A program made the translations under genes and the position numbers. Of a stretch of 64,000 bases of DNA, positions 4,264 through 56,456 are shown in pieces (position 1 is the first letter of the stretch; each line of letters starts with the position of its first letter). The stretch spans positions 124,001-188,000 of the IMG/VR virus record IMGVR_UViG_3300021964_009390; one strand, written 5' to 3'. A model generated the notes under the pieces. It saw nothing but the letters and a program-made list of their open reading frames with translations. It did no database searches and had not been told where the DNA came from.

Positions 4264-4636
4264 ATTTTGATAAATCTATGTTTGCTTGTTTTATATAAAC
4301 ATTTATCTCCCTTGTTGAAATTTCAAGTTTTTTTGCTAACTTGATAATAATGTCCATGTACTCGTCACGTGGTTTATGTTTTTTAATGTAATTAATGCGC
4401 TTGAACCGCTCACGTGGTATAATGTAATGCAATAATTTGTAATGGTCCTGTTTATTTTCAAAAACCTGAAACATTATATTCGCGGTGTTGTTTATTAAAT
4501 TGCATGTCTGTTTGTTCAACATGCTACACCATCTATTTACTAAAAACGGTTGGTAGTCGCTCTGCTGGTCCAGAGTCTTGAGTGATGGTTCTTTTTTAGT
4601 AAATAATATATTTGATAGGTAGTTAAATATGTTCAC
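4235..4636 (-). CDS. gp62: clamp loader small subunit (T4 gp62-like)
   Basis: IFNYLSNILFTKK...YQPFLVNRWCSM...HYKLLHYIIPR...YIKK. Confidence 0.65.
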   Translation of the reverse strand: MNIFNYLSNILFTKKEPSLKTLDQQSDYQPFLVNRWCSMLNKQTCNLINNTANIMFQVFENKQDHYKLLHYIIPRERFKRINYIKKHKPRDEYMDIIIKLAKKLEISTREINVYIKQANIDLSKYEYTTKSKH

Positions 4637-5229
4637 TTAACTATCGTCTTGGTCGTCGCAAGAAACATATCATCATTAATATGGTAAAACATGTCTATTA
4701 TCTCGCGCATGAATTGACCAACCTGCATGTTGTTCAAATTAGTAGAAAATGCATGGTCTGGAGCACGATCACCCGCGGTTATGTTTATTCCGGTATGACC
4801 TAGTGTCACCCCGGATTTTACATATGTTATACTCACACTACATTTACCTTTAGGCTGACTTACACCGTTCTGCTCATGATCTTGATGTACGATCAGATCA
4901 TCACCATCCACCTCAATAGGGGCATTGTTTAAAAAACGTGAGCTCAACACATTAGCAATTTGTGTATTTAACAACCGTTGATACGCTACAGCCCCAAACG
5001 GGTCAGACAAGCACGGTATCTCCCACAAAAAATTTATCGCATCATCACTATATATGAACTCATTTTTCAATATATCTTCTGTATCAATCATACCATCTGC
5101 CTCTACAATCATTGGAGACCGGAAGGCAATAATGTTACCTATAGGTAATGTTTTTTCTCTAAAAAATTTATACGCGAATCTATCATGCAGCAGCGCACCA
5201 TCATAACACTCAATATCATTAATTATCAT
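4633..5229 (-). CDS. DUF366 family protein (lipoate/biotin ligase-like fold)
   Basis: YDG..L...FAY...IIAFRSPM...D.ED...I.SDD..NF..E...AVAYQRL...DGDDL...K.SVSI...HTGINI. Confidence 0.7.
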   Translation of the reverse strand: MIINDIECYDGALLHDRFAYKFFREKTLPIGNIIAFRSPMIVEADGMIDTEDILKNEFIYSDDAINFLWEIPCLSDPFGAVAYQRLLNTQIANVLSSRFLNNAPIEVDGDDLIVHQDHEQNGVSQPKGKCSVSITYVKSGVTLGHTGINITAGDRAPDHAFSTNLNNMQVGQFMREIIDMFYHINDDMFLATTKTIVK

Positions 5230-5236
5230 ACGATAT

Positions 5237-5265
5237 ATTATAGTATATTAAATCGTAGTTTTCAA
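5237..5265 (-). promoter_or_regulatory. sigma70-type promoter TTGAAA-17-TATAAT, 7 nt upstream of ATG 5229
   Basis: Read directly from the sequence. Confidence 0.75.
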
Positions 5266-21280: not shown

Positions 21281-21967
21281 CTACAACTTTCCTCCAGGGA
21301 ACACATCATCTGGCTTGATATTAAATTTAGCTAGTTCTTCCCAGTCTATATCACTATCCCCTTCATCATATGTATCACCATCGTCTGTTACGTACAAGCT
21401 AGCCTGTCGAATCCTCTCTCTAGGTGACCCTGACAGCTGTATCACTGCCGGGCGGTCGTCTGTATGAAAGAACACACTCGAGGGTTGCAGGGATTGGTAC
21501 TCGATCTGCCTCAAAATTCCGTCAACTTCTTGTATGTATCCCGGGTCGGTGTCTCTGGTTCCGTTGCTCTCGATACTAATCGTGTTATCATACGGTATAT
21601 AAAATACTATATCTATAAATTTCATACTCTCTTTCACCAGCGGTATACAACTCTCTATAAACTCTTCATCGATGTCACTCAACTGCTTGTCATATGAATA
21701 CAATGAATATGCTATGTTGTCTATGGGGCACCGGTCAAATATAACATGATCATCTCGTGTGTATTTCATTTGCTGATCCACCATGAAATCTAGAATGGTT
21801 TGTTGTGTCTCTTTGTTAGTCTCTTTGCTGTGATCTAAACCTTTTTCAGTTAAGATGTCTCTATATGATTCTGAGGGTTTATGATACACGCCTTCCCAAT
21901 TTTTTAAAAAATCATTCACAAATGTGCTTTTACCCACACACGCAGTTCCAGTTACAGCTACTCTCAT
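21281..21967 (-). CDS. P-loop nucleotide kinase (AAA_28/NadR-like)
   Basis: VTGTACVGKST, FDRCPIDN.AY, NGTRD. Confidence 0.75.
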   Translation of the reverse strand: MRVAVTGTACVGKSTFVNDFLKNWEGVYHKPSESYRDILTEKGLDHSKETNKETQQTILDFMVDQQMKYTRDDHVIFDRCPIDNIAYSLYSYDKQLSDIDEEFIESCIPLVKESMKFIDIVFYIPYDNTISIESNGTRDTDPGYIQEVDGILRQIEYQSLQPSSVFFHTDDRPAVIQLSGSPRERIRQASLYVTDDGDTYDEGDSDIDWEELAKFNIKPDDVFPGGKL

Positions 21968-23009: not shown

Positions 23010-23813
23010 TTATACTCCTGTTGTTTGATCCCACGCACTAACATGCAATCTAGTCAATGCCGTATAACCGTATTTTTTACCCATCTCCATACAAAACTGT
23101 GTACGTTCATGATAATCTTCACGTTTGTCTAACCCGGGCATCATCAGCACTCGCTTGGGTTGTATACCGAAAGGTTTGATAAAATCTCTCTCTATTTCTT
23201 CTAAACATGATTCTTCACTTATTACAAACTTGAACCAGTGATTATAGTGCTCCATGATTCTTTCCAATGCGCGTGGTACTATCCGGCGCTTGCTATCCAT
23301 ACCACTGTTAGCTAGTTTTACAGAACAGTTTATTTGATCTAGATGTTCAAATAAATCATCTTCTATATACATGGTACCGTTGGTTTCTATCTCGTTAAAC
23401 AAATATCTACCCTGTGGGCTGTCCTTGATGTCCTGTTCATCATCACCCCATGTAGAATGTTTGTCATAAAACCATTTCAAGAAACCTACGATGGCGCGTT
23501 GGTTTTTGGGTATAGTTGGTTCACCACCAGTCCATATCAAGTTGACTCGACCTTCTTTGATCCAGTCATACACGTTTTGTTCTTTCCACCTATCTACTAG
23601 ATAACTGAAAGGTTTTTCTAGGCCTTTCTTCCACACATACTCTGTGTCACACCACCATGTTGCTTGGCCTGACTTCATCAGGCTACCGTCGACACCTCCG
23701 CACATCAAGTTACATGCTTTGAGTCGTATGAAGTACGCTGGTACACCACTGGTTTGACCTTCACCTTGAACGCTGTAAAAATCTTCTGAAATGTTTAATG
23801 TATCTATTTCCAT
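23010..23813 (-). CDS. queE: 7-carboxy-7-deazaguanine synthase QueE (radical SAM)
   Basis: FYSVQGEG..SG.PA.FIRL..CNL.C...(insert)...WCDT, TGGEP, ETNG, RLHV. Confidence 0.9.
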   Translation of the reverse strand: MEIDTLNISEDFYSVQGEGQTSGVPAYFIRLKACNLMCGGVDGSLMKSGQATWWCDTEYVWKKGLEKPFSYLVDRWKEQNVYDWIKEGRVNLIWTGGEPTIPKNQRAIVGFLKWFYDKHSTWGDDEQDIKDSPQGRYLFNEIETNGTMYIEDDLFEHLDQINCSVKLANSGMDSKRRIVPRALERIMEHYNHWFKFVISEESCLEEIERDFIKPFGIQPKRVLMMPGLDKREDYHERTQFCMEMGKKYGYTALTRLHVSAWDQTTGV

Positions 23814-23817
23814 ATAT

Positions 23818-24525
23818 TTAAAATAACCACGTGTTTTTAGTTTTACCACTATATTTTGGATCCACCCATTTACCCACTGTCTTGTTTTGAGCATCTTTCA
23901 ATTTAGGTGGAGGTGTTTTGAATGGTGGCTTGGTAATTTTTTTAGCATTATCATCCTGTTGTTTGATTTCTTGCGCGACCGATTCTTCAGAAGTCTCAAC
24001 AGACTCGCGAGTCTCTTCATGATGTTCTTGTTCTAGTGTCGATAGGTAACTGTCACTAGAGATATATGTATCTGATGTCTTTTCGCTCCCCGGAAATTCT
24101 TGATATACAGCTGAGTTGTCCTGGTGTTCAAACACCTCTACTTTGACACATCTGCACCTGAGCTTGGTTATCACACCTACATAATTGTCTGCTGCTGAAT
24201 GGCACCATTCAGCGAATTTCTCTATACCCACACCATCCATCACGCGCAAGTCACACACACCGGCTTGGTCTAGTTGCTTGAACACGCTTAATTTAGGATC
24301 ATCACTAGATATACAAGTGGTATGATCAAATTGTTGTTTGAGCAGTGCTTTAAATTCTTTAAAATTACCGAAGTCTACAACCCAGTTGTTTTCGTCTAAA
24401 GTTTCTGCCGCAAACCAGAATTTAGCTTTGAGTTGGTAGCCATGTATGAATCTACAATGGCTAGTGGCTCTTGGTTGTCTAAACGCGCAGCTACCTAGTT
24501 CAATAGTTTTTGTACTGTAATGCAT
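23818..24525 (-). CDS. queD: 6-carboxytetrahydropterin synthase QueD with C-terminal extension
   Basis: SHCRFIHGY, WVVDFG, FDHT, EVFEH..NSA. Confidence 0.88.
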   Translation of the reverse strand: MHYSTKTIELGSCAFRQPRATSHCRFIHGYQLKAKFWFAAETLDENNWVVDFGNFKEFKALLKQQFDHTTCISSDDPKLSVFKQLDQAGVCDLRVMDGVGIEKFAEWCHSAADNYVGVITKLRCRCVKVEVFEHQDNSAVYQEFPGSEKTSDTYISSDSYLSTLEQEHHEETRESVETSEESVAQEIKQQDDNAKKITKPPFKTPPPKLKDAQNKTVGKWVDPKYSGKTKNTWLF

Positions 24526-24531
24526 CTAATA

Positions 24532-24560
24532 ATTATAGATGCCTTTACATGGATATTCAA
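24532..24560 (-). promoter_or_regulatory. sigma70-type promoter TTGAAT-17-TATAAT, 6 nt upstream of queD ATG
   Basis: Read directly from the sequence. Confidence 0.8.
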
Positions 24561-24563
24561 GTG

Positions 24564-28219: not shown

Positions 28220-28241
28220 TACAATTATTTATGTTTAATAC

Positions 28242-28270
28242 TTGAATATAACTAGGCTTGTGTATATAAT
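28242..28270 (+). promoter_or_regulatory. sigma70-type promoter TTGAAT-17-TATAAT, 6 nt upstream of folE ATG
   Basis: Read directly from the sequence. Confidence 0.8.
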
Positions 28271-28276
28271 CATTGT

Positions 28277-28921
28277 ATGGATTACGTAAAATTACAATAC
28301 GCTAACGGTAATCATCCTAGAACACCAGAAGAGCGAGAGAAAATTATAGATAATGCAGCAAAAGCATATGAAGCATACATGGATGCATTATGTTTTGATT
28401 GGAGATCAGACCCTAACAGCGCTGACACACCCAGACGTGTGGCAAAAGCTTTTGTAAATGATCTTGCGGCTGGTTGTTATACTGAACCCCCTAACATCAC
28501 TACATTTGATAATGTAGATCAATACGATGGTTTAGTATTTCAGGGTAATATAAAGACTAACTCGTTTTGTTCACATCATCATTTACCTTTTATAGGACAG
28601 ACGCATGTAGCTTACATACCAGGTAAAGATGGTAAGGTGATCGGGTTGAGTAAATTGAACAGAATAGTCGAGTGGTTCTCTCGTAGACCACAAGTTCAAG
28701 AAAATTTAACCATGCAGGTACATAAGTATATCAATCAAGTATGCGAAGGTAATAACGGTGTTGCGGTGTTAGTTGAAGCTAACCATACATGTGCTGGACT
28801 GAGAGGTATCAAGCATGATAGTACTATGAAAACAGCTCGTATGAGTGGGGCATTTTTAGATAAAAAGGATATTAATACACGACAAGAATTTTACGACTTT
28901 GTAAGAGATTTAAAACGATGA
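28277..28921 (+). CDS. folE: GTP cyclohydrolase I
   Basis: DTPRRVAKA, SFCSHHHLPF, VIGLSKLNR, RRPQVQE, H.C...RG. Confidence 0.95.
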   Translation: MDYVKLQYANGNHPRTPEEREKIIDNAAKAYEAYMDALCFDWRSDPNSADTPRRVAKAFVNDLAAGCYTEPPNITTFDNVDQYDGLVFQGNIKTNSFCSHHHLPFIGQTHVAYIPGKDGKVIGLSKLNRIVEWFSRRPQVQENLTMQVHKYINQVCEGNNGVAVLVEANHTCAGLRGIKHDSTMKTARMSGAFLDKKDINTRQEFYDFVRDLKR

Positions 28922-29073
28922 AAACTATATTTGATAAAGTTGATACAAAATATTTAGATTGTACATCAGGTACATGTGAGCATGTAGCTCATAATTTTAA
29001 CGGTATACTGTTAGTCACTATTGCATTAGCAATCGTGACTGTAAAAGTATATCAATATTTAAACACCAGATAA
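28918..29073 (+). CDS. 51-aa putative membrane peptide (not in ORF track)
   Basis: ATGA overlap with folE stop; MKTIFDKVDTKYLDCTSGTCEHVAHNFNGILLVTIALAIVTVKVYQYLNTR. Confidence 0.55.
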   Translation: MKTIFDKVDTKYLDCTSGTCEHVAHNFNGILLVTIALAIVTVKVYQYLNTR

Positions 29074-29640
29074 TATACGTTTCACTTGTTCCGGATCTAC
29101 ATGTTCTGGTATATCTGAGACAAACACACTTGGATCGTCAATATTGTTACGTATATTAGATGCGCTGTAAGGTGTTCCGTCAGGCTTGTTTAATATATCA
29201 ACAGCTGTAAGTTGTGGGTCTAATACCTCCACGTTCAATTGTTTAGAATCTGCCCATTTCTTAGCACCAGACCATCTCTTCCAGTCATTGTCTTTCTTAC
29301 TCGCACCAAGTATCACACGTTTACCGTTCAAAGTTTCGAGTGCTAGATACGCAGCTCCTACCGGACTAGGTTGAGGGCTGATCTCTACAGTCACGTTGGG
29401 TAAGTTTGAAACATATAATTCAAATATTTTTTTAGACATTTCTGGAGTTATCACCTGGCCAGTCTTGGTCTTTCTCACACTCTTCTCACTAGGAGCAGAT
29501 ATCAACACCACAACATCATCAGCCATGCCAGAGTAGATGCTCACCATTTGATAATGACCTTTATGCGGTGGTTTGAAGCTTCCAGGTACTAAAGCAATGT
29601 CAGCGCCGGTAGTAACATAATCTTTAAAGCTAGGTATCAT
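29059..29640 (-). CDS. HxGH nucleotidyltransferase (cytidylyltransferase-like)
   Basis: PGSFKPPHKGH and YSASNIR signature. Confidence 0.85.
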   Translation of the reverse strand: MIPSFKDYVTTGADIALVPGSFKPPHKGHYQMVSIYSGMADDVVVLISAPSEKSVRKTKTGQVITPEMSKKIFELYVSNLPNVTVEISPQPSPVGAAYLALETLNGKRVILGASKKDNDWKRWSGAKKWADSKQLNVEVLDPQLTAVDILNKPDGTPYSASNIRNNIDDPSVFVSDIPEHVDPEQVKRILSGV

Positions 29641-30011
29641 TACATGTCTTTATGTAGTGACCAATCAACTGATCCTAGACCTTCGTTACGTATCAAATCA
29701 ATACCGGTCGCACGTACTCCTGGTTTACCTGGGTCCATATCATTTATCAAGAATCTAGGACCTCTCTCGATCTCCATGATCAGTCTATCATACACAATAT
29801 TATTCTCCGCTAGCTCTTTGACTGTATGATCTCTTAAATATTCCGGTCTGGCTGTAGTTAATATTATCATATGACCTAGATCTTTCCAATAATTCATTTT
29901 ATCGACAACTCCAGACAGGACTTTTGGTTTAGATGTCATGTACGTTTCAAACTTACGATACTCAAATAGAGTACCATCAATATCACAAAATATAGTGTTT
30001 TTCTTTTCCAT
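29640..30011 (-). CDS. HAD-family phosphatase (Pnkp-phosphatase-like)
   Basis: FCDIDGTL, LTTARP, IND. Confidence 0.8.
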   Translation of the reverse strand: MEKKNTIFCDIDGTLFEYRKFETYMTSKPKVLSGVVDKMNYWKDLGHMIILTTARPEYLRDHTVKELAENNIVYDRLIMEIERGPRFLINDMDPGKPGVRATGIDLIRNEGLGSVDWSLHKDM

Positions 30012-44162: not shown

Positions 44163-44224
44163 ACAAATTGTAAAAATATTGAATATATGTGGATTTTTGT
44201 CATATAATATTATATCATATATAC

Positions 44225-44656: not shown

Positions 44657-45713
44657 AAAATCAGACATTAGCGCTGATGCTCTCAAAGCATTAGATAGTA
44701 TAGATAAAATGAACCCGTTAGCCGGGTTTTTAACTGAGAGTACGTTGAGTAATGTCAATGACTGGCACGATACCGGCTGTCTTGTGCTAAACAGCATAAT
44801 TAGTGGTAGTTTGTACAAAGGTGTACCAAAAGGTAGAGTTACTGGTTTCGCCGGTCCGAGTATGGCAGGTAAGACATACATAATCAATAAGATATTAGCT
44901 GGAGCTCAACGCGAAGGTATGATTCCAGTGATTTTTGACACAGAAGCTGCAGTAGATGAAAATAGTGTACGTGGAGTTGGTTTAGACCCGGAAAAAGTTA
45001 AATATGTCCCAGTGCAAACTGTAGAAGAGACCCGTAACCAAATTGTAAAATTTTTAGATCATATCATTGAAAATAAACAACAAGGTAAATTTATCATAAG
45101 TATTGATAGTTTAGGTAACCTCGCTAGTCAAAAAGAGATGGAAGACATCACCAAGGACAAAACCGCGGTAGATATGGGCACACGAGCCAAAGGGCTCAAG
45201 AGCATGATGAGGACTCTCACATTCAAAGCAGCAGAAGCTGACACTACCATATTGTTCAGTAATCATACTTATGATGATCCGGCTGCTATGTTTCCATCTC
45301 TAGTAAAAAACCAAGCCGGTGGTAAAGGACCAGTGTATCTCGCCAGTGTGTTGGTGCAATTGGCCAAGAAAGATGAGCGTCATGACAAAAATAACGAGTC
45401 TGATCAAATGATCGCAGAGGCTAAAACATATAGTGGTACCACGTTACGTGCTCTGACTGTCAAAAACCGGTTTGTACCACCGTTTCTTGAGGCGGAAATG
45501 TATTTAAACTTTAAAACTGGGTTAGATAAATACTCCGGACTGTTAAACATTGCAGTAAATCATGGTGCAATTGTACAAACCGGTAGTACATACCAATTAC
45601 CTGATGGTACCAAGCTAGGTTATTACAAGCAGTGGAGAGATAATGACGAAATATGGGACAAGGTTCTTCCCGTCATTGAAGAAAAACTAAAAGAAGATTA
45701 TCAGTACAATTAG
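44649..45713 (+). CDS. uvsX: RecA-like recombinase UvsX
   Basis: GPSMAGKT, FDTE, IDSLG, DMG.RAK, NH.Y, KNRF. Confidence 0.93.
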   Translation: MGKKSDISADALKALDSIDKMNPLAGFLTESTLSNVNDWHDTGCLVLNSIISGSLYKGVPKGRVTGFAGPSMAGKTYIINKILAGAQREGMIPVIFDTEAAVDENSVRGVGLDPEKVKYVPVQTVEETRNQIVKFLDHIIENKQQGKFIISIDSLGNLASQKEMEDITKDKTAVDMGTRAKGLKSMMRTLTFKAAEADTTILFSNHTYDDPAAMFPSLVKNQAGGKGPVYLASVLVQLAKKDERHDKNNESDQMIAEAKTYSGTTLRALTVKNRFVPPFLEAEMYLNFKTGLDKYSGLLNIAVNHGAIVQTGSTYQLPDGTKLGYYKQWRDNDEIWDKVLPVIEEKLKEDYQYN

Positions 45714-47101
45714 TTGATAGGTCTGTTAGCCCATCCGGGTCTCCATAGTATATCTTCTTTGATAGTAGGAGCACCGGCCATTTTCCATGACGGTGTAGCG
45801 TCTGGTATCCCATCCCCATTAACATCCCAGTTCATTTGAGGCTGTGCTGGTTGAGCAGGTGCTGTAGCACCGGGTTGAGCAGGTTGTGTAGCAGCATCTC
45901 CGCCACCACCAGCTCCACTCATCATTGAAGATACTTTGCTGATACCATCACCTAGAGCACCTAAACCAACACCTACAGCCCCACCGGTATGTCCTCGAGA
46001 TAAAACATCCTTGTCTGTAGCCGTTTGTTTCAAAGCTTCCATTGGCTCTAGACCTTGAGCTCTAAGCTCTTTATATTTTTGAAAACCAGCTAAACCACCA
46101 GCAGCAGCAAAACCTGCCCCGTACCGGGCAATAATCATAGGTAAAGCAGCTCCCATCGCCAAGCTAGCTGCCCCTAATATACCGACAGCAGCTGTTTTAG
46201 TTAAGTTGGGATTTTCCTTAACCCATCCCATAATTTTCTTCATCATGCCTTGCTTTTCACCACCGGCCGCGGCTGGTTGCTCTTCTTTGTTACCAAAAAT
46301 TCTATCATGCCCCATCCGGTATTTTTCACTACTATCACCAGCTTGCTGCGAACCGTCTATTTTTTGGTTCTCATTATCATCATACTGTTGAAGCTCTGCA
46401 TCAGTAGGATTATTCGGGTCTAATTGCCCCGCAGGCATCGGTTTGTTTGCCACATCCGGTGCTTGCGTCTGTTGTGCTTGTGCCTGTTGATCATTATAAC
46501 CTTGTTTGAAACCACCTGCAGCATCTTTCGCGCCAGTGGCAATAGCTTGTCCAGCTTTTTTAGCTCCTTTACCAATTGCTGTACCAACTTTTCCGAGACC
46601 TTTGGCAATGTTACCGAGTAACCCTTCATTATGTAAATATAAAATATGCTCGCGAATCATCTCCTTGTATTCATCTACTCCCTCGTTGACTGTTTGCGGT
46701 TCCGGTGAATTAGCTATTTGATTCTCTACCTGACCAGCCCCCTCTTCATCTAGCGCTTGATCTAACGCTTGGGGCCCTTCTTGAGCTGCTGTTGTGACTT
46801 TGACCAAAGTATCTGGATCATTTGCCTTCAACCATTCTATAGCCTTCTGTATAACTGGTTGTAACATCTTATCGTTAACTGTTTGAGCGATGTTTTGCAC
46901 TCCGGTTTTAGCTGCTCCTACAGCTTTACCGGCCAGATTACCCAAGGTTCCCATGAGACCCTCTTCTATTAAAATTTGTTCCACCAGTTGTGCTGTCAAT
47001 TCAGTATCATACTGGTAACCCTCAGCAAAAATGCGTCTGACACGCTGTGTCCTGGCACGTCTCTCAAAACTTTCGAAAATTAAATGATTGTCTCTGTTCA
47101 T
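45710..47101 (-). CDS. Gly/Ala-rich late protein with amphipathic and hydrophobic helices (candidate ejected internal protein)
   Basis: 463 aa against the flow of the replication genes; TAAATA 9 nt upstream; repeated (I/V/L)xEG sites. Confidence 0.7.
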   Translation of the reverse strand: MNRDNHLIFESFERRARTQRVRRIFAEGYQYDTELTAQLVEQILIEEGLMGTLGNLAGKAVGAAKTGVQNIAQTVNDKMLQPVIQKAIEWLKANDPDTLVKVTTAAQEGPQALDQALDEEGAGQVENQIANSPEPQTVNEGVDEYKEMIREHILYLHNEGLLGNIAKGLGKVGTAIGKGAKKAGQAIATGAKDAAGGFKQGYNDQQAQAQQTQAPDVANKPMPAGQLDPNNPTDAELQQYDDNENQKIDGSQQAGDSSEKYRMGHDRIFGNKEEQPAAAGGEKQGMMKKIMGWVKENPNLTKTAAVGILGAASLAMGAALPMIIARYGAGFAAAGGLAGFQKYKELRAQGLEPMEALKQTATDKDVLSRGHTGGAVGVGLGALGDGISKVSSMMSGAGGGGDAATQPAQPGATAPAQPAQPQMNWDVNGDGIPDATPSWKMAGAPTIKEDILWRPGWANRPIN

Positions 47102-47104
47102 AGC

Positions 47105-47133
47105 TTGAATTATTTATGTTAGTATACTATAAT
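47105..47133 (+). promoter_or_regulatory. sigma70-type promoter TTGAAT-17-TATAAT, 5 nt upstream of queC; spacer contains the minus-strand TAAATA
   Basis: Read directly from the sequence. Confidence 0.8.
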
Positions 47134-47138
47134 TATGT

Positions 47139-47849
47139 ATGAAAAAATGCATAATCCCGGTCAGCGGTGGTATAGACTCATCAACCATACTGTATTATAC
47201 ACACAAATCACGCAAGGATTTTGATGAAATACATACAGTCACTTTTGATTATGGTCAGAGGCATAGCAAAGAGATTGAACATGCCGAATTGATAACCAAA
47301 AATGTCAGCACCAGTCACAAAGTTTTAGATGTAACATTTTTAAAAAACATTATAACGTCTAGCTCATTGACCAATGATAGTATAGATGTAGCAAAAACTG
47401 CAGATGTACTAGGTGACCCACAAACCGTCAATTATGTACCTAACAGAAACATGATCTTACTATCCATTTGTACTGGTTATGCGGAGAGTATCGGAGCCAG
47501 CGTTGTGTACCATGGCGCCGCACAAGTTGATAGTGAGGCTGGTTATTGGGATGGTACTCAAGAGTTTATTAGTTGCATGAACCTAGTGAACAGTTTGAAC
47601 AGACGAGATCGGGTGACTATTGAAGCACCTCTGTTACAAATGTCAAAACAACAAATAATTAAACTAGGTGTAGATAGTGATTTGGATTTCAGTAAAACGT
47701 GGACCTGTTATGAAGGTGGTACTAAAGCATGTGGTAGATGCACCGCATGCAGTAGCAGAATCAAAGGATTCGTAGATAATAAATTAATTGACCCAGTGGA
47801 GTATGAAATAGATATACCATGGGACAAATACAACTGCGAGAGACTGTAA
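47139..47849 (+). CDS. queC: 7-cyano-7-deazaguanine synthase QueC
   Basis: SGGIDS, FDYGQRH, YVPNRN, TWTCY...CGRCTAC..R. Confidence 0.95.
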   Translation: MKKCIIPVSGGIDSSTILYYTHKSRKDFDEIHTVTFDYGQRHSKEIEHAELITKNVSTSHKVLDVTFLKNIITSSSLTNDSIDVAKTADVLGDPQTVNYVPNRNMILLSICTGYAESIGASVVYHGAAQVDSEAGYWDGTQEFISCMNLVNSLNRRDRVTIEAPLLQMSKQQIIKLGVDSDLDFSKTWTCYEGGTKACGRCTACSSRIKGFVDNKLIDPVEYEIDIPWDKYNCERL

Positions 47850-47850
47850 T

Positions 47851-48522
47851 ATGTGTGGTGTATACGGTTCTACTTGTTACAATAGATTTAAAGATCTATA
47901 CAAATTAAACACAACAAGGGGCAATTTCGCAAACGGTCATGTTTTTGTGAGTGATTCTCAAGATGGTCGATCTCTACATATATCAAAATCTCCCGGGACT
48001 AAAAAATATACTGATGTAATAGATGAGAATATTAAAATACACTTAGGTCATACACAATCCCCGACCGGTAGTGTAAGAGACTATCATCCATCTACAACAC
48101 ACCCATTCGAGAGCAGAAATTGGATCGTTGGTCATAATGGTGTCATTAATAATTTTGAAAAACTAAAACAACAGTATGCACCACATAGCAAATGCAATGT
48201 TGACACGAGTATAATACCCTATTTACTAGAGATGTATATAGCTACCCGACATACTGAGCAAGAAATAACAAATATCGTGAAAAGAGTGTTAGACATGATA
48301 AATGGTACGTACGGGTTGTTTATTTTTAATAAAAAATACAACCTCTTGTATGTAGCTAGATCTGGAAGCACTCTGTTTTATGACCCTAAGGATGGTAGTT
48401 TCAGCTCTACACAGCATGGTAACATGGTGGATCTACCAGAACATACACTGTTTAAAGTCAACGGTAACATATATGAACGAGTAGCTAGTCTATCTAATAA
48501 CTCATCATTTTTAATATTATAA
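47851..48522 (+). CDS. class II (Ntn) glutamine amidotransferase
   Basis: N-terminal MCGVYG nucleophile Cys, RG, HPF, HNGVINN, DT. Confidence 0.85.
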   Translation: MCGVYGSTCYNRFKDLYKLNTTRGNFANGHVFVSDSQDGRSLHISKSPGTKKYTDVIDENIKIHLGHTQSPTGSVRDYHPSTTHPFESRNWIVGHNGVINNFEKLKQQYAPHSKCNVDTSIIPYLLEMYIATRHTEQEITNIVKRVLDMINGTYGLFIFNKKYNLLYVARSGSTLFYDPKDGSFSSTQHGNMVDLPEHTLFKVNGNIYERVASLSNNSSFLIL

Positions 48523-49226
48523 TGAAAAATAAAAAAATTGAACTTAAACCTATACTCATTGTGAGCTGTACTCAAAATGAATCATGGAAAGATACAAGAT
48601 TAGGATCATGTAAAGCCAGCTTGGAAAACCAAGCTAAATTCAAGTTTGTAACAAACAATAAACAAGGACTACCTAAATGTTATAATAAATTTTTAACAAA
48701 AAAAATAGCAGAAAAACATGATATAATTGTATTTTGTCATGATGATTTATATATAGATGATTTAAAATTGCGAGGAAAATTATACAAATCGCTATACGCC
48801 GACAAATATGATATTGTCGGCCTCGCCGGTGCTAGTACATGCAAAATAGAACATGGTAAACCTACCCTGTGGCATTTGATGAGCGAGCGAGATACATGGA
48901 GCGGTACTGTTTTCCACCCGCGTGGTGTTGATACAAATCAAGTGATGTCTACAACGTTCGGACCAACTCCATCTAGATGTCTCGTGTTAGATGGTGTGTT
49001 TCTTGCAGTGAACATACACCGTGCCCGGGAGAAAAAATGGAAATTTAATGATACATTTGACTTTCATCATTATGACATAGCTAGCTGTATTGATGCAAAT
49101 ACCAAGCAATTGAAACTCGGTACATGTATGATACACGCTATTCACGACTCTCCCGGCTTACACTCTATAGAAGACCCAGACTGGCTGTCTAGCCAGGACA
49201 AATTTTTAAAGTTGTATGGTGAGTAA
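48522..49226 (+). CDS. GT-A glycosyltransferase-like protein
   Basis: YN, FCHDD, GLAGA, LDGVF.A, FHHYD...C. Confidence 0.75.
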   Translation: MKNKKIELKPILIVSCTQNESWKDTRLGSCKASLENQAKFKFVTNNKQGLPKCYNKFLTKKIAEKHDIIVFCHDDLYIDDLKLRGKLYKSLYADKYDIVGLAGASTCKIEHGKPTLWHLMSERDTWSGTVFHPRGVDTNQVMSTTFGPTPSRCLVLDGVFLAVNIHRAREKKWKFNDTFDFHHYDIASCIDANTKQLKLGTCMIHAIHDSPGLHSIEDPDWLSSQDKFLKLYGE

Positions 49227-49246: not shown

Positions 49247-50569
49247 ATGATAGGTATAGACGAGCAGTTATTTGAGCACGTGCTCATATACAACTGTATG
49301 ACAGATGAAAGGTATCTAGCTAGTGTGATAGATTATCTCAAACCGGAGCATATCAAAGACTCTAACATTAAGCAGACATACAATTTGTTAGTAGACTTTT
49401 ACAATGATCACAGTGAGTTACCAAGCTCTACAGAAATTAAAACACGTTGTGATAATGACGATTTAAAAGCCGCAGTCCGGATCACTGTGAGTTACATCAA
49501 GAATATCGATAAAAACTATAATAAAGATGAATTGTATAAAAACACAGAACAGTTCATTAAGGAACGTGCAGTGTATAGTACCTTGATGGAGGTTGTAGAT
49601 CAAGGCTCTTCCGGGAGTTTAGAGCCGGCAGATCTATTAACTAAATTTGAATCTGCATGTAACATTAATTTGAATGTTGATGTAGGTGTAAATTATTTTG
49701 AAGATATCGACCGGCATGTAGACGATATAAATAGAGAAGAGAAGTACGTGAGTACCGGTTGGCAATGGCTTGATAAAAAACTCAATGGGGGTTTTGTAGA
49801 AACTGGCCGGGCATTGTATGTTTTCGCTGGAGAGACTAATGTAGGTAAAAGTATATTGCTAGGTAATATAGCTACTAACTTATGTAAGCAGGGTAAAAAT
49901 GTGTTGTTAGTTTCATTAGAAATGTCAGAGATGCTATACTCTAAGAGGTTGAGCTCAAACATAGCACAGGTACCTATAAATGAGACTCATTTAAGTGTAG
50001 AATATTTGAAAGAATCTATTAAAAATTTTAAGAACACTCACAAAGATTGTTCTTTGATCGTCAAAGAGTTTCCTCCTAGTACCGTGACACCTCAACAACT
50101 AACAGCATATATTAATAAGTTATGCCAAACAGTGATGCGCCCAGACGCAATAGTACTAGATTATATCAACCTGTTGAAAGGTCCACCTGGTACAAACAGT
50201 TATGAACAAATTAAAAAGGTAACTGAGAATGTAAGAGCCATGTCATATAAATTTGAATGCCCGGTCATCACCGCAACTCAGTTAAACCGTTCTGGTTACA
50301 ACGAGACTGACCCGGGATTGGATACAGTCGGAGAAAGTTATGGTATGGGAGCAACAGCAGATTGTGTGGTGAGTATATGGCAGCGAGATGAAGATGCTGA
50401 ATTGAATGTAATCAATTTAGGTATGATGAAAAACCGGTTCGGTCCTAACTTCGGTACATGTGCGATGGATATAGACTATGGTACTTTGACAGTCACAGAA
50501 CAAGAAAACGTGAACGAAACAGAACAGATGAATGAAACTATCGGTACCCTATCTATATTGAGCAATTAA
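49247..50569 (+). CDS. gp41: replicative DnaB-like helicase gp41
   Basis: GETNVGKS, SLEM, VKEFP, DYINL, TATQLNR, ESYG..ATAD, KNRFG. Confidence 0.95.
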   Translation: MIGIDEQLFEHVLIYNCMTDERYLASVIDYLKPEHIKDSNIKQTYNLLVDFYNDHSELPSSTEIKTRCDNDDLKAAVRITVSYIKNIDKNYNKDELYKNTEQFIKERAVYSTLMEVVDQGSSGSLEPADLLTKFESACNINLNVDVGVNYFEDIDRHVDDINREEKYVSTGWQWLDKKLNGGFVETGRALYVFAGETNVGKSILLGNIATNLCKQGKNVLLVSLEMSEMLYSKRLSSNIAQVPINETHLSVEYLKESIKNFKNTHKDCSLIVKEFPPSTVTPQQLTAYINKLCQTVMRPDAIVLDYINLLKGPPGTNSYEQIKKVTENVRAMSYKFECPVITATQLNRSGYNETDPGLDTVGESYGMGATADCVVSIWQRDEDAELNVINLGMMKNRFGPNFGTCAMDIDYGTLTVTEQENVNETEQMNETIGTLSILSN

Positions 50570-52201: not shown

Positions 52202-52497
52202 TGAACATGTATAGAGACAGTACAGTCGATCCGGTGCAGTCTCTGTATGATAAGGATTTAGAACATACATTTTATAGTTTTTGCAGTTTTGTATGTATGT
52301 CAACAAACAAAAAACAAAACATAGCTAATATATTTTTATATGTATTGGAGAATCAAGAAATTTTAAACCTATACATGGAACTAGGAGACCACTCAACAAA
52401 GTATGACGCCATCCGGAGTTTTTTAACTATTGAACCATCTTTACAAAAAAGCAAATATATAAAAAGATATATAAACAAAAACGTTGAAACAAATTAA
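52201..52497 (+). CDS. hypothetical protein
   Basis: ORF coupled to the DHH stop. Confidence 0.6.
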   Translation: MNMYRDSTVDPVQSLYDKDLEHTFYSFCSFVCMSTNKKQNIANIFLYVLENQEILNLYMELGDHSTKYDAIRSFLTIEPSLQKSKYIKRYINKNVETN

Positions 52498-52512
52498 ACA
52501 ATATACTATAAT
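52484..52512 (+). promoter_or_regulatory. sigma70-type promoter TTGAAA-17-TATAAT, 14 nt upstream of the gp32 ATG
   Basis: Read directly from the sequence. Confidence 0.75.
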
Positions 52513-55160: not shown

Positions 55161-55482
55161 CAGAGGAGATGACAAAAAAAAGAGTACCCAACCGGACAAA
55201 TCTGAAGAGTTATCTAAACAGTTTGACGACGCGTTGACCAATTTTTTAAAAAACCAAGCTAAAACCAAAAACAAATCTCTAAAAAATTACAAATCATTAG
55301 AAAATTTATTAAACCAATATTTAAACAGTTTCATATTGATAGGGTACACACAAGACACTAGACAGTTTATAAGTTTAGTGAACGCTAAAAATGAGCAACA
55401 TGCTGATTCGTTAAGTACCGCATTGAATAAATTTATTGTAAAAAACGCGCAAATTAAAAATATACCACCCGATATATACTGA
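55144..55482 (+). CDS. hypothetical late protein
   Basis: TATAAATA 6 nt upstream. Confidence 0.65.
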   Translation: MTRENNRGDDKKKSTQPDKSEELSKQFDDALTNFLKNQAKTKNKSLKNYKSLENLLNQYLNSFILIGYTQDTRQFISLVNAKNEQHADSLSTALNKFIVKNAQIKNIPPDIY

Positions 55483-56456
55483 TGAAAAAAATTGCAATCT
55501 TCGGTCAAGGCTATGTAGGTACACAGCTAGAAGAATCCGCTCCACAACATGGTGCTCGAGCTTCTCATAATGATCTTGAAAATGTGTATGAAATAAAAAC
55601 ATATACTAAAAAAGAACACAAATACCACAAAGCTGAAAAATTTATAAAAATTTTAAACCAATTCAAACCGGATTATGTAATCAATGCATGTGGATACACG
55701 GGTCGACCTAATGTAGATGCATGCGAAACCGACAAGCAAAATTGCTGGAACCTTAATGTGAATTTACCGGTAACTATGTCTACTATATGCAGAACATATG
55801 ATATACCCTTCATACACATAAGTAGCGGTTGTGTATATACAGGATACGATAAACATTATACAGAAGAAGATCCCCCTAATTTTGGCATGGGCTCTACAGT
55901 AAGTAGTTGGTATAGTAAAACAAAGCATGCTGCAGAAATGCAGTTACAAGACGCTTATGTGTTTCGTATCCGCATGCCATTCTGTAACAATAACCATGAG
56001 AGGAATTTCCTCAACAAAGTATTGAAATATGACCGGTTGATTGAATATAAGAATTCCATGACCTCTATTCCAGACTTCATGCGTTTTGTATGGAGATTTA
56101 TTCACAGAATGGAGCTACAAAACACAGTAGACCTGCAACAATTACCCGGTGAAATGACTCCAGGTATTTACAACGTCTGCAACCCGGGAGCTATATCCAT
56201 AAGCGATGTAGTTGAACTATTTAAACAGAACGGGATATCTAACTGCAACTGGTCATTTGTTGATATGGAATCTCTATCGTTAAAAGCGAATCGTTCCAAC
56301 TGCTTATTAGATTGTTCTAAAATAGACAGACTGGGACTAGGATTACCTCCCGCGATTGATAGCTTAACGACATGTGTACAAGAGCTTTGCAAAAAATTAT
56401 TATGGAAAACCGGATTGCAAGGACCTAAAACTGGTTTGGAGTGGCAAATAAGGTAA
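55482..56456 (+). CDS. NDP-4-keto-6-deoxyglucose epimerase/reductase (RmlD / NRS-ER-like)
   Basis: G.GYVG, GYTGRPNVDACE, SSGCVY, YSKTK, RIRMP, NSMT, RSNC.LD. Confidence 0.8.
   Translation: MKKIAIFGQGYVGTQLEESAPQHGARASHNDLENVYEIKTYTKKEHKYHKAEKFIKILNQFKPDYVINACGYTGRPNVDACETDKQNCWNLNVNLPVTMSTICRTYDIPFIHISSGCVYTGYDKHYTEEDPPNFGMGSTVSSWYSKTKHAAEMQLQDAYVFRIRMPFCNNNHERNFLNKVLKYDRLIEYKNSMTSIPDFMRFVWRFIHRMELQNTVDLQQLPGEMTPGIYNVCNPGAISISDVVELFKQNGISNCNWSFVDMESLSLKANRSNCLLDCSKIDRLGLGLPPAIDSLTTCVQELCKKLLWKTGLQGPKTGLEWQIR

What the first reader, a model, noticed from the sequence alone, without database searches (positions are those of the whole stretch)
47105..49226. queC - amidotransferase - glycosyltransferase operon: possible new hypermodified 7-deazaguanine
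Seen: one early promoter drives three abutting genes directly before the replicative helicase, while folE, queD and queE lie elsewhere in the window under matching promoters. Known: FolE-QueD-QueE-QueC make preQ0, GAT-QueC-type enzymes are linked to archaeosine (G+), and phages insert such bases into DNA via DpdA to block restriction. I know of no described glycosylated deazaguanine in DNA. Inference: the stand-alone Ntn amidotransferase makes an amidine or amine handle (or feeds ammonia to QueC), and the coupled GT-A protein may add a sugar. dpdA was not recognised in this window.
Basis: partly seen in the sequence, partly recalled or inferred. Interest (0 to 1): 0.75.

Follow-up and report, generated by a model that had tools for sequence, protein, structure and literature searches.

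The report
QueC arm of deazaguanine DNA system
The three genes are real and belong to a complete phage system that most likely replaces guanine in its DNA with an already described 7-deazaguanine base (formyl-preQ1 type), whereas the neighbouring glycosyltransferase also persists in a related phage whose 114-kb fragment lacks every pathway gene searched, so a sugar-bearing deazaguanine is possible but unlikely.

Summary
Observation confirmed. queC (47139-47849), a stand-alone Ntn glutamine amidotransferase (47851-48522) and a GT-A glycosyltransferase (48522-49226) abut behind one sigma70-like promoter, just upstream of the DnaB-like helicase. folE, queD and queE lie elsewhere in the window behind the same promoter pattern.

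Interpretation partly supported. The window is part of a 222-kb uncultured marine T4-like phage. The "missing" dpdA lies outside the window (G000:8.9-12.5 kb). It is a DpdA3-type transglycosylase with a TGT fold, 44% identical to DpdA3 of Flavobacterium phage immuto_2-6A. It is followed by a DpdN-like formyltransferase, a dGTP diphosphohydrolase, a kinase and QueF, in the gene order of that phage, whose DNA carries fdPreQ1 in place of G. The most likely product is therefore a known base.

The amidotransferase travels with QueC, also in KVP40-like vibriophages. It is best read as QueC's glutaminase partner, a split Gat-QueC.

The GT neighbours QueC and Gat in two differently arranged phage clades. 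But there are QueC+Gat loci without it and GT phages without the pathway, 44-49% identical cellular homologues sit in unrelated contexts, and immuto lacks it.

I put a glycosylated deazaguanine at about 0.12.

The parts
47104..47133 (+). Sigma70-like early promoter (CTTGAA-N18-TATAAT); the -10 box ends 5 nt before the queC ATG
   Evidence: One of 3 sites in the window (0.17 expected) and 5 in the genome.
47139..47849 (+). QueC, 7-cyano-7-deazaguanine synthase (PP-loop ATPase)
   Evidence: PF06508 2.4e-59. TIGR00364 185.5 bits, over its cut-off. The SGGxDS motif and C190 are invariant in 39 homologues.
47851..48522 (+). Stand-alone class-II (Ntn) glutamine amidotransferase; inferred glutaminase partner of QueC
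   Evidence: GATase_6/7. GlmS and PurF N-terminal domains at 1e-13 with the family profile. Cys2, R23-G24, H95-N96-G97 and D118 are invariant or nearly so. Homologous to nt-1 ORF392, phrog_12378.
48522..49226 (+). GT-A fold glycosyltransferase (PF13712-like, majastridin-like); acceptor unknown
   Evidence: Model pLDDT 97. Best PDB match 2QGI/2NXV, TM 0.70. H73-D74-D75, D157, D185 and H208 are conserved. Homologues carry PF13712.
49247..50569 (+). DnaB-like replicative helicase (context; the GT lies directly upstream of it throughout clade 1)
   Evidence: PF03796 3.4e-26 and phrog_19 2e-78. GT-DnaB are adjacent in 32 of 32 loci.
28241..28270 (+). Matching early promoter of folE
28277..28921 (+). 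FolE, GTP cyclohydrolase I
   Evidence: PF01227 2.8e-46. 53% identical to immuto FolE.
24532..24561 (-). Matching early promoter of queD-queE
23818..24525 (-). QueD (6-carboxy-tetrahydropterin synthase, PTPS family)
   Evidence: PF01242 4.1e-16.
23010..23894 (-). QueE (radical-SAM 7-carboxy-7-deazaguanine synthase); the true start is probably internal
   Evidence: phrog_2076 1.3e-42 at G000:147013-147807, which is window 23013-23807.
21281..21967 (-). AAA_28 / thymidylate-kinase-like nucleotide kinase, linked to queE in relatives
   Evidence: PF13521 8.8e-13. phrog_2107. Found next to QueE in G006, G007 and G009.

Best explanation
The operon is the QueC arm of a complete, dispersed 7-deazaguanine DNA-modification system in an uncultured marine T4-like phage. 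Shown by homology: FolE, QueD and QueE, which lie in the window, make CDG. QueC converts CDG to preQ0. Inferred: the stand-alone Ntn amidotransferase supplies QueC with ammonia from glutamine. Together the two proteins would work like a split Gat-QueC, or like asparagine synthetase B. Outside the window (G000:8.9-12.5 kb) lie QueF, which makes preQ1 from preQ0, a DpdN-like formyltransferase, a DpdA3-type transglycosylase, a dGTP diphosphohydrolase and a nucleotide kinase. The gene order matches Flavobacterium phage immuto_2-6A. The predicted outcome is therefore guanine replaced by 7-formamidomethyl-7-deazaguanine (fdPreQ1), or by preQ1, which protects the DNA against restriction. The GT-A glycosyltransferase is co-transcribed and translationally coupled with the amidotransferase. 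It is nevertheless an evolutionarily separable accessory gene whose acceptor is unknown. It most likely acts on something other than the deazaguanine, such as a protein, a glycan or another substrate.
For: The DpdA3-like ORF matches phiST DpdA3 at 3e-7 among 2,528 ORFs and at 2e-9 pairwise over its full length. It is 44% identical to immuto DpdA3 and 44-45% to the CP220-group proteins. Its model has pLDDT 93.8, and all 50 best PDB matches are tRNA-guanine transglycosylases. The neighbouring genes are Formyl_trans_N (44% identical to immuto DpdN), PF18909, AAA_28 and a bimodular QueF (49% identical to immuto QueF). Their order matches immuto, whose DNA carries fdPreQ1 at 345,000 per 10^6 nucleotides (PMC10516641). 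The complete relative G006 has the same three modules. For the amidotransferase, the catalytic Cys, the Asn-Gly pair and the Asp are conserved in about 60 homologues. Gat and QueC are present or absent together: 32 of 34 complete clade-1 loci have both and 2 have neither, and in clade 2 15 loci have both and 18 neither, with the one Gat-only locus cut too short upstream to show QueC. A Gat homologue follows QueC in nt-1 and F86. For the separability of the GT: 2 of 34 complete clade-1 loci have the GT only and 2 have QueC+Gat only. In clade 2, 18 of 34 loci have the GT only. Five GT-only records of 41-114 kb lack both QueC and DpdA3. G011 contains PolB, UvsX, DnaB, gp32 and primase, yet lacks QueC and Gat at the conserved GT locus and lacks the QueD, QueE and DpdA3 genes that G017 carries interleaved with PolB and UvsX. 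P0122 (49% identical) lies in a cellular MAG and P0125 (44%) in a flagellin, TPR and DegT island. No GT homologue exists in 50,697 phage records, immuto included.
Against: No chemistry was measured, so fdPreQ1 is inferred from 40-50% identical enzymes and shared gene order. QueC, Gat and GT stay neighbours in two clades whose surroundings differ: between UvsX and DnaB in one, between primase and structural genes in the other. They occur in the orders QueC-Gat-GT and QueC-GT-Gat. That is hard to explain without some functional tie. The genome has no ThyA or dCMP-hydroxymethylase homologue and no TET/JBP homologue. If the GT acts on DNA, no other handle is visible. The phage also carries nucleotide-sugar genes: RmlD-like, CTP_transf_like and HAD. 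All GT-only records are incomplete (at most 54%). The complex prediction for QueC and Gat gave no answer.
Confidence: 0.6

Rival explanations
1. One reading: the GT adds a sugar to a deazaguanine side chain, such as the preQ1 amine, the ADG amide or the G+ amidine. This would happen before or after insertion by DpdA3 and would give a glycosylated 7-deazaguanine in DNA.
For: The three genes are neighbours in 30 of 34 complete clade-1 loci and in 15 of 34 clade-2 loci, in three arrangements and two genomic contexts. gat and GT overlap in TAATG. GT-A enzymes that glycosylate phage DNA are known (bioRxiv 10.1101/2023.12.21.572611). The genome has no hydroxymethyl- or hydroxy-pyrimidine route. Sugar-nucleotide genes are scattered through the same region in relatives: Glf, GMD-like and RmlD-like.
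Against: GT-only relatives lack QueC and DpdA3, and G011 lacks QueD and QueE as well. QueC+Gat loci exist without the GT. Cellular homologues 44-49% identical lie in non-deazaguanine contexts. fdPreQ1 and preQ1 offer no hydroxyl. immuto and the KVP40-like phages run their pathways without this GT.
Confidence: 0.12
2. QueC plus the amidotransferase work like Gat-QueC of phage 9g, so archaeosine (dG+) or the amide dADG is a major final base. QueF and DpdN would be minor or serve another purpose.
For: The N-terminus of the amidotransferase aligns with the Gat domain of 9g Gat-QueC (E 9e-4). phrog_1550 and phrog_10428 contain such fusions. CP220-group phages, which carry dADG and whose DpdA3 is 44-45% identical, also give a Gat-like hit.
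Against: QueF is present with both domains, and a DpdN-like formyltransferase lies beside DpdA3 in the immuto order. QueF needs preQ0. KVP40-like phages that have the same QueC-Gat pair carry mainly dPreQ0, dPreQ1 or mdPreQ1, and the dG+ of nt-1 was assigned to ArcS2 (PMC6884629, PMC10516641).
Confidence: 0.15
3. The base enters DNA at the nucleotide level rather than only by base exchange. A Gpt-like phosphoribosyltransferase would make the deazaguanine nucleotide and the AAA_28 kinases would phosphorylate it. The PF18909 enzyme would remove dGTP, and the polymerase would incorporate the analogue. DpdA3 would have a supporting or different role. This concerns the route and is compatible with the best explanation of the product.
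For: The Gpt-like PRTase lies at G000:75716-76261. Its only homologues among phage records are 27. They include both tested phage groups with 100% G replacement that encode a full or partial pathway (the phiST and immuto groups) and Brevundimonas phages in which it abuts FolE. In G006 it lies 4 kb from DpdA3. Kinase genes sit next to queE and next to queF. A dGTP diphosphohydrolase lies in the DpdA3 module, and next to the GT in L014 and G008. GMP-reductase-like genes lie between queC and gat in nine relatives.
Against: The published view is post-replicative insertion by DpdA (PMC10516641). A PRTase, kinases and a dNTPase are also ordinary nucleotide-salvage genes of large phages. CP220-group phages gave no PRTase hit. 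No enzyme assay exists.
Confidence: 0.2
4. The pathway only raises the host's preQ0 or queuosine supply for tRNA, and the DNA is not modified.
For: PF01702, the DpdA1, DpdA2 and DpdA4 models and the nt-1 DpdA2 protein find nothing in the genome.
Against: A DpdA3-type TGT-fold protein is present. It sits with QueF and DpdN as in a phage with fully modified DNA. The only tRNAs are Met and Thr. PF01702 does not detect even the DpdA1 proteins, so those negatives carry little weight.
Confidence: 0.03

Closest known systems
[quoted passage not shown] 2023, PMC10516641)
   Same: All seven components are present. Identities are DpdA3 44%, DpdN 44%, QueF 49%, FolE 53%, QueD 40%. The order DpdA3-DpdN-kinase-QueF is the same, and a Gpt-like PRTase is shared.
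   Different: The host phage here is a T4-like marine lineage whose polymerase is about 31% identical to those of cyanophages. QueC is of a different type (26% identical) and comes with a separate glutaminase. An extra PF18909 dGTP diphosphohydrolase is present. The GT is absent from immuto. The genes are split into three modules tens of kb apart.
Gat-QueC fusion of Enterobacteria phage 9g and Crenarchaeota (dG+/G+ synthase; Hutinet et al. 2019, PMC6884629)
   Same: A class-II glutaminase module is combined with a QueC PP-loop module, and the N-terminal Cys and the HNG motif align.
   Different: Here there are two genes in the order QueC then Gat, not one Gat-QueC polypeptide. Similarity to the 9g Gat domain is weak (22% identity, E 9e-4). 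QueF and DpdN downstream argue for preQ0 as the product rather than G+.
ORF following QueC in KVP40-like vibriophages (nt-1 VPFG_00173, F86 VPHF86_0153; phrog_12378, annotated 'unknown function')
   Same: It is homologous to the window's amidotransferase (E 3e-8; phrog_12378 1e-11). It occupies the same position immediately after QueC.
   Different: Those phages use DpdA2 and ArcS2 or DpdM and have no GT after it. The protein is unannotated there.
Majastridin (Rhodobacter blasticus ATPase-operon ORF6, PDB 2QGI/2NXV) and Pfam PF13712 Glyco_tranf_2_5
   Same: GT-A fold with TM 0.70. An HDD (DxD-type) motif is present. Homologues score over the PF13712 cut-off.
   Different: Sequence identity is only 16-17%. 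The acceptor of majastridin is itself unknown, so it gives no clue to the substrate.
Phage DNA glycosyltransferases acting on 5hmC or 5hoC (T4 alpha/beta-GT; GT-A and GT-B enzymes of 5mYOX or ThyA-homologue clusters, PMC13326640)
   Same: It is an early-region phage GT next to replication genes. GT-A enzymes can act on DNA. The phage encodes nucleotide-sugar enzymes.
   Different: The genome has no ThyA-family and no TET/JBP-family gene to create the hydroxyl handle. No sequence relationship to those GTs was tested.

Membership tests
QueC (7-cyano-7-deazaguanine synthase) | Family profile score over the curated cut-off | tested here: met
   TIGR00364 185.5 bits against a cut-off of 150.3. PF06508 200.8 bits against 22.
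QueC (7-cyano-7-deazaguanine synthase) | PP-loop SGGxDS motif and C-terminal Cys cluster | tested here: met
   S9 G10 G11 D13 S14 and C190 are invariant in 39 homologues, and the window sequence reads ...ACGRCTACSSR.
Class-II (Ntn) glutamine amidotransferase | N-terminal catalytic Cys, Asn-Gly oxyanion pair and glutamine-binding Asp | tested here: met
   C2 96-100%, H95-N96-G97 98-100% and D118 100% conserved. The profile hits the GlmS and PurF glutaminase domains at 1e-13 to 1e-10.
Class-II (Ntn) glutamine amidotransferase | Glutaminase activity coupled to a synthase partner | not testable with these tools
   The complex prediction for QueC and Gat returned 'no answer'.
Gat-QueC (dG+ synthase, phage 9g type) | Single polypeptide with an N-terminal Gat domain fused to QueC | tested here: not met
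   Two ORFs in the order QueC then Gat, separated by a stop codon and 1 nt.
Gat-QueC (dG+ synthase, phage 9g type) | Produces archaeosine base or dG+ | not testable with these tools
   There is no chemistry. QueF and DpdN in the genome argue for preQ0 as the product of this step.
GT-A glycosyltransferase (PF13712-like) | GT-A Rossmann-like fold | tested here: met
   Model pLDDT 97. 227 PDB matches at E<=0.001. Those listed are almost all GT-A glycosyltransferases, and the best is 2QGI with TM 0.70.
GT-A glycosyltransferase (PF13712-like) | DxD-type metal and nucleotide-sugar motif | tested here: met
   H73 and D75 are invariant and D74 is at least 90% conserved in 84 sequences.
GT-A glycosyltransferase (PF13712-like) | Pfam profile match of the protein itself | tested here: not met
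   No family at E<=0.01 for the window protein. Homologues at 49-69% identity pass at 27.8-38.2 bits against a cut-off of 27.
DpdA3 (DNA 7-deazaguanine transglycosylase) | Homology to DpdA3 proteins of phages with proven modification | tested here: met
   44% identical to immuto, 44-45% to the CP220 group and 23-25% to phiST CGPG_00065.
DpdA3 (DNA 7-deazaguanine transglycosylase) | TGT-superfamily fold | tested here: met
   All 50 best PDB matches are tRNA-guanine transglycosylases, probability 1.00, TMq 0.56-0.67.
DpdA3 (DNA 7-deazaguanine transglycosylase) | Inserts a deazaguanine into DNA | not testable with these tools
   DpdA3 activity has not been reconstituted even for the reference phages (PMC10516641).
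fdPreQ1 pathway (QueF + DpdN) | QueF and a PurN-family formyltransferase of the DpdN group, clustered with DpdA | tested here: met
   QueF_N 8.4e-32 and QueF 1.2e-22. Formyl_trans_N 6.8e-10, 44% identical to immuto DpdN. Same gene order.
fdPreQ1 pathway (QueF + DpdN) | fdPreQ1 present in virion DNA | not testable with these tools
   The phage is uncultured and no nucleoside data exist.
Hydroxy(methyl)pyrimidine glycosylation (T4, RB69 and 5mYOX types) | ThyA-family hydroxymethylase or hydroxylase, or a TET/JBP dioxygenase, to make the acceptor | tested here: not met
   PF00303 gave 0 matches, and PF12851 gave 0 matches, in G000 and in the complete relative G006.

The most novel reading that the evidence does not exclude
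In the phages that carry QueC and Gat next to it, the GT-A enzyme puts a sugar on a 7-deazaguanine side chain. That would give the first glycosylated 7-deazapurine in DNA. The variable sugar-nucleotide genes found around the locus in relatives (Glf, GMD-like, RmlD-like) would then diversify the glycan. A second unexcluded novelty concerns DpdA3-type systems that replace all G. They may work through a Gpt-like phosphoribosyltransferase, kinases and a dGTP diphosphohydrolase, that is at the nucleotide level.
Probability: 0.12. Interest if true: 0.85.

Novelty: new variant of a known kind. Interest (0 to 1): 0.42.

Why it matters
The work places a DpdA3/DpdN-type guanine-replacement system in a large, abundant, uncultured clade of marine T4-like phages. 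More than 100 metagenomic loci were recovered here. This bears on restriction evasion in the ocean and on sequencing bias against such DNA.

It gives a testable function to a protein family annotated as unknown (phrog_12378): the glutaminase subunit of QueC. A glutamine-dependent QueC would make sense in ammonium-poor seawater.

It also flags a Gpt-like phosphoribosyltransferase that accompanies the phiST and immuto phage groups, whose guanine is fully replaced. No paper found in the library searched links it to DpdA3. This reopens the question of whether insertion is purely post-replicative.

The headline idea, a sugar on a deazaguanine, is made less likely but remains directly testable.

Tried and rejected
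(1) HMMER-level dpdA searches of the genome all found nothing: PF01702, PF20314, phrog_887, phrog_7068, phrog_10773 and the nt-1 DpdA2 protein. These negatives proved uninformative, because even 9g-type DpdA1 proteins carry no precomputed PF01702 hit.

(2) A local hhalign scan compared 144 G000 ORF alignments with DpdA1 and DpdA2 profiles. Its positive control, DpdA2 against DpdA1, scored 1% probability, so the scan was discarded.

(3) The unknown ORFs between queD and folE (352 aa and 551 aa) were tried as dpdA candidates in the ESM Atlas. Their models are poor (pLDDT 0.36-0.38) and not TIM barrels, and the ORFs are not conserved in relatives.

(4) The recurrent 340-aa ORF between queC and gat in relatives was suspected to be a DpdA. 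It is a GMP-reductase-like protein.

(5) Complex prediction for QueC and Gat gave no answer, which is evidence neither for nor against.

I re-ran it without those rows.

(7) DNA and protein searches with the operon and the GT against cultured phages gave no match.

(8) T4-like hmC glucosylation as the GT's role was rejected: the genome has no ThyA-family or TET/JBP gene.

(9) FolE and QueF searches in clade-2 records found nothing even in the QueC+ records, so their absence from GT-only records is uninformative.
Full report
**What is there.** The window is G000:C1:124001-188000 of a 222,461-bp IMG/VR virus record that CheckV rates complete. It is a T4-like genome: it encodes UvsX, UvsY, a UvsW-like helicase, gp46/47-like nucleases, gp32 (PF08804 on the orthologues in relatives), a family-B polymerase, a DnaB-like helicase, a primase and PhoH. 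The polymerase is only about 31% identical to its best matches among 50,697 phage records, which are marine cyanomyoviruses. This is therefore a deeply divergent uncultured lineage.

At the stated coordinates three ORFs abut.
- QueC, 47139-47849: PF06508 at 2.4e-59, and TIGR00364 over its cut-off.
- A 223-aa class-II (Ntn) glutamine amidotransferase, 47851-48522: GATase_6 at 2.3e-8. A profile of its family hits the GlmS and PurF glutaminase domains at 1e-13 to 1e-10.
- A 234-aa protein, 48522-49226, with no Pfam or PHROG hit of its own.

One nucleotide separates queC from gat. gat and the third gene overlap in TAATG. Twenty nucleotides separate the third gene from the helicase.

**Promoters.** CTTGAA-N18-TATAAT lies at 47104-47133. 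The pattern occurs three times in the window, in front of queC, folE and queD-queE. Chance expectation is 0.17, and no shuffle out of 100 reached three matches. Genome-wide there are five such sites and twelve of the looser form. This is therefore the phage's general strong early-promoter class, of which the pathway uses three. The -10 box ends 5-6 nt before the ATG, so these mRNAs are nearly leaderless.

FolE (28277-28921), QueD (23818-24525, minus) and QueE (23010-23894, minus) are confirmed.

**The third gene is a glycosyltransferase.** It has 622 homologues in the 90%-identity-clustered protein collection, most of them carrying PF13712. It has 984 representatives in the 50%-clustered library. 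An alignment of 84 sequences shows an invariant H73 and D75 (an HDD motif), D157, D185 and H208. The AlphaFold model has pLDDT 97. Its best PDB match is majastridin in complex with UDP (2QGI, TM 0.70), and the other listed matches are almost all GT-A enzymes. The fold and a nucleotide-sugar donor are thus well supported. The acceptor is not.

**Where dpdA is.** PF01702, the PHROG models for DpdA1 and DpdA2, the nt-1 DpdA2 protein and DUF6610 (DpdA4) find nothing in the genome. PF01702 also finds nothing in five relatives. These negatives weigh little, because DpdA1 proteins themselves have no precomputed PF01702 hit. My local hhalign scan failed its positive control.

The lead came from a Gpt-like phosphoribosyltransferase at G000:75716-76261. 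Its few phage homologues include the Cellulophaga phiST and Flavobacterium immuto groups. I took DpdA3 of phiST (CGPG_00065) from the record. phmmer then found an ORF at G000:8810-9730, and its orthologues in relatives G006 and G010, at 1e-6 to 2e-7. The pairwise alignment is full-length at 2e-9. This ORF is 44% identical to the annotated DpdA3 of immuto_2-6A and 44-45% to the CP220-group proteins. Its model has pLDDT 93.8, and all 50 best PDB matches are tRNA-guanine transglycosylases.

Next to it lie four more genes:
- a PurN-family formyltransferase, 44% identical to immuto DpdN;
- a PF18909 dGTP diphosphohydrolase;
- an AAA_28 kinase;
- a bimodular QueF, 49% identical to immuto QueF.

The order DpdA3-DpdN-kinase-QueF is that of immuto_2-6A. 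In that phage's DNA, G is replaced by 7-formamidomethyl-7-deazaguanine, fdPreQ1 (PMC10516641). The complete 230-kb relative G006 carries the same three modules.

The genome encodes only tRNA-Met and tRNA-Thr. A tRNA-only role is therefore very unlikely. The predicted product is a base that is already known.

**The amidotransferase.** About 60 non-identical homologues keep Cys2, R23-G24, H95-N96-G97 and D118. By established knowledge of GlmS and PurF, these are the catalytic set of Ntn glutaminases.

The gene follows QueC in the KVP40-like vibriophages nt-1 and F86. There it is annotated as hypothetical (phrog_12378). It aligns weakly with the Gat domain of 9g Gat-QueC. In both phage clades studied here QueC and Gat are present or absent together.

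The simplest mechanism is inferred, not shown. QueC is a PP-loop enzyme related to the synthetase domain of asparagine synthetase B. It would receive ammonia from this glutaminase for the conversion of CDG to ADG and then to preQ0. The complex prediction gave no answer.

**Is the GT part of the pathway? Evidence for.** In clade 1, anchored on DnaB (80 loci), 34 loci cover the whole UvsX-DnaB interval. Thirty of these have QueC, Gat and GT, and the GT is always directly upstream of DnaB.

A second clade has about 40% identical core genes in a different arrangement. There the GT lies between the primase and structural genes. Fifteen of its 34 loci again have all three genes, in the orders QueC-GT-Gat or QueC-Gat-GT.

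Relatives carry sugar-nucleotide genes in the same region: UDP-galactopyranose mutase, a GDP-mannose-dehydratase-like gene and an RmlD-like gene. The genome has no ThyA-family or TET/JBP gene that could make a hydroxylated pyrimidine acceptor.

**Evidence against.**
- Two of the 34 complete clade-1 loci have the GT only and two have QueC+Gat only. In L075 and L076 a GMD-like dehydratase lies between Gat and DnaB, where the GT normally sits. The 27- and 51-kb records behind two QueC+Gat-only loci contain no GT.
- In clade 2, 18 loci have the GT only.
- Five such records of 41-114 kb lack both QueC and DpdA3.
- G011 (114 kb) contains primase, PolB, UvsX, DnaB, gp32 and PhoH. It contains none of QueC, Gat, QueD, QueE or DpdA3. 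In the QueC+ clade-2 genome G017, QueC and Gat flank the GT, and QueE, DpdA3 and QueD are interleaved with PolB and UvsX.
- The nearest non-phage homologues are 49% and 44% identical. One lies in a cellular, archaeal-looking MAG. The other lies in a bacterial island with flagellin, TPR and DegT genes. Neither has a queC nearby. Other family members are fused to TPR repeats.
- immuto_2-6A makes fdPreQ1 without any homologue of this GT.
- fdPreQ1 and preQ1 have no hydroxyl group.

I conclude that the GT is a neighbour with a possibly related but separable role. I put a glycosylated deazaguanine at about 0.12.

**Other leads.** The Gpt-like PRTase, two nucleotide-kinase-like genes and the dGTP diphosphohydrolase accompany the pathway. 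GMP-reductase-like genes are inserted between queC and gat in nine relatives. By my own recollection, GMP reductase is the enzyme class of ToyE in the toyocamycin pathway. Together these suggest that part of the pathway may run on nucleotides. The reference paper does not mention a PRTase or kinases, and I found no paper that links DpdA3 to a PRTase. This is a hypothesis only.

**Verdict.** The core is a new instance of the known DpdA3/DpdN deazaguanine system in an uncultured marine T4-like clade. It has a split glutaminase-QueC pair and an associated GT of unknown target. Interest is moderate.

Noticed in passing
outside the window: G000:8810-12535 (locus L136:3810-7535): A second deazaguanine module lies here: a DpdA3-like transglycosylase, a DpdN-like formyltransferase, a PF18909 dGTP diphosphohydrolase, an AAA_28 kinase and a bimodular QueF. 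It is flanked by an HNH endonuclease and an 820-aa ClpB-like AAA+ protein.
   Followed up: yes
outside the window: G000:75716-76261 (L133:1438-1983): A Gpt-like xanthine/guanine phosphoribosyltransferase. Its only homologues in 50,697 phage records are 27. They include the phiST and immuto groups (100% G replacement) and Brevundimonas phages in which it abuts FolE. No paper found in the library searched links it to DpdA3.
   Followed up: partly
relatives L064:5730-6785, L037:5940-6965, L057, L067, L041, L059, L061, L032, L087: A GMP-reductase-like gene (PF00478, without CBS domains) is inserted between queC and gat. This is the same enzyme class as ToyE of the toyocamycin pathway. L064 also has a 2OG-Fe dioxygenase (PF10014) there, and L045 a UDP-galactopyranose mutase.
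   Followed up: partly
window 24532-24561(-), 28241-28270(+), 47104-47133(+); also 5237-5265(-), 44179-44208(+), 52484-52512(+): Strong sigma70-like early promoters. At the three pathway sites the TATAAT box ends 5-6 nt before the start codon and no Shine-Dalgarno sequence is present, which implies leaderless or nearly leaderless early mRNAs.
   Followed up: partly
window 29059-29640(-), 29640-30011(-), 55482-56456(+): A cytidylyltransferase-like gene and a small HAD phosphatase lie next to folE, and an RmlD/epimerase-like gene lies downstream of gp32. The phage thus encodes nucleotide-sugar enzymes that could feed the GT.
   Followed up: no
window 4633-5229(-): A 198-aa protein whose clade-2 counterpart carries PF04017 (DUF366). 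In clade 2 it is present next to Gat in QueC+ loci (L139, L166) and absent from the GT-only locus L150 and from genome G011.
   Followed up: partly
window 21281-21967(-) and L136:6080-6637: Two AAA_28 / thymidylate-kinase-like genes, one linked to queE and one to queF. Both linkages are conserved in relatives, and the second is conserved in phage immuto_2-6A.
   Followed up: partly
relatives L014:4679-5011 and G008:89287-89562: In some relatives the PF18909 dGTP diphosphohydrolase sits immediately upstream of the GT instead of in the DpdA3 module. A SegE-like GIY-YIG homing endonuclease separates queC from gat in L014.
   Followed up: no
outside the window: G000:32277-32660, 78905-78980, 80307-80382: ARAGORN calls a tmRNA-like gene and only two tRNAs (Met-CAT, Thr-TGT) in the whole genome. 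The tmRNA call was not verified.
   Followed up: no
window 45710-47101(-): A 463-aa Ala/Gly/Gln-rich low-complexity protein, divergent from queC. It has no family hit and is not conserved at this position in relatives, where other genes fill the UvsX-queC gap.
   Followed up: no
Campylobacter phage A11a, L132:20001-20387: CP220-group phages (dADG in place of G; DpdA3 44-45% identical to the one here) give a weak hit to the amidotransferase (27% identity, 4e-8 against the locus). No QueC hit lies within 20 kb on either side.
   Followed up: partly
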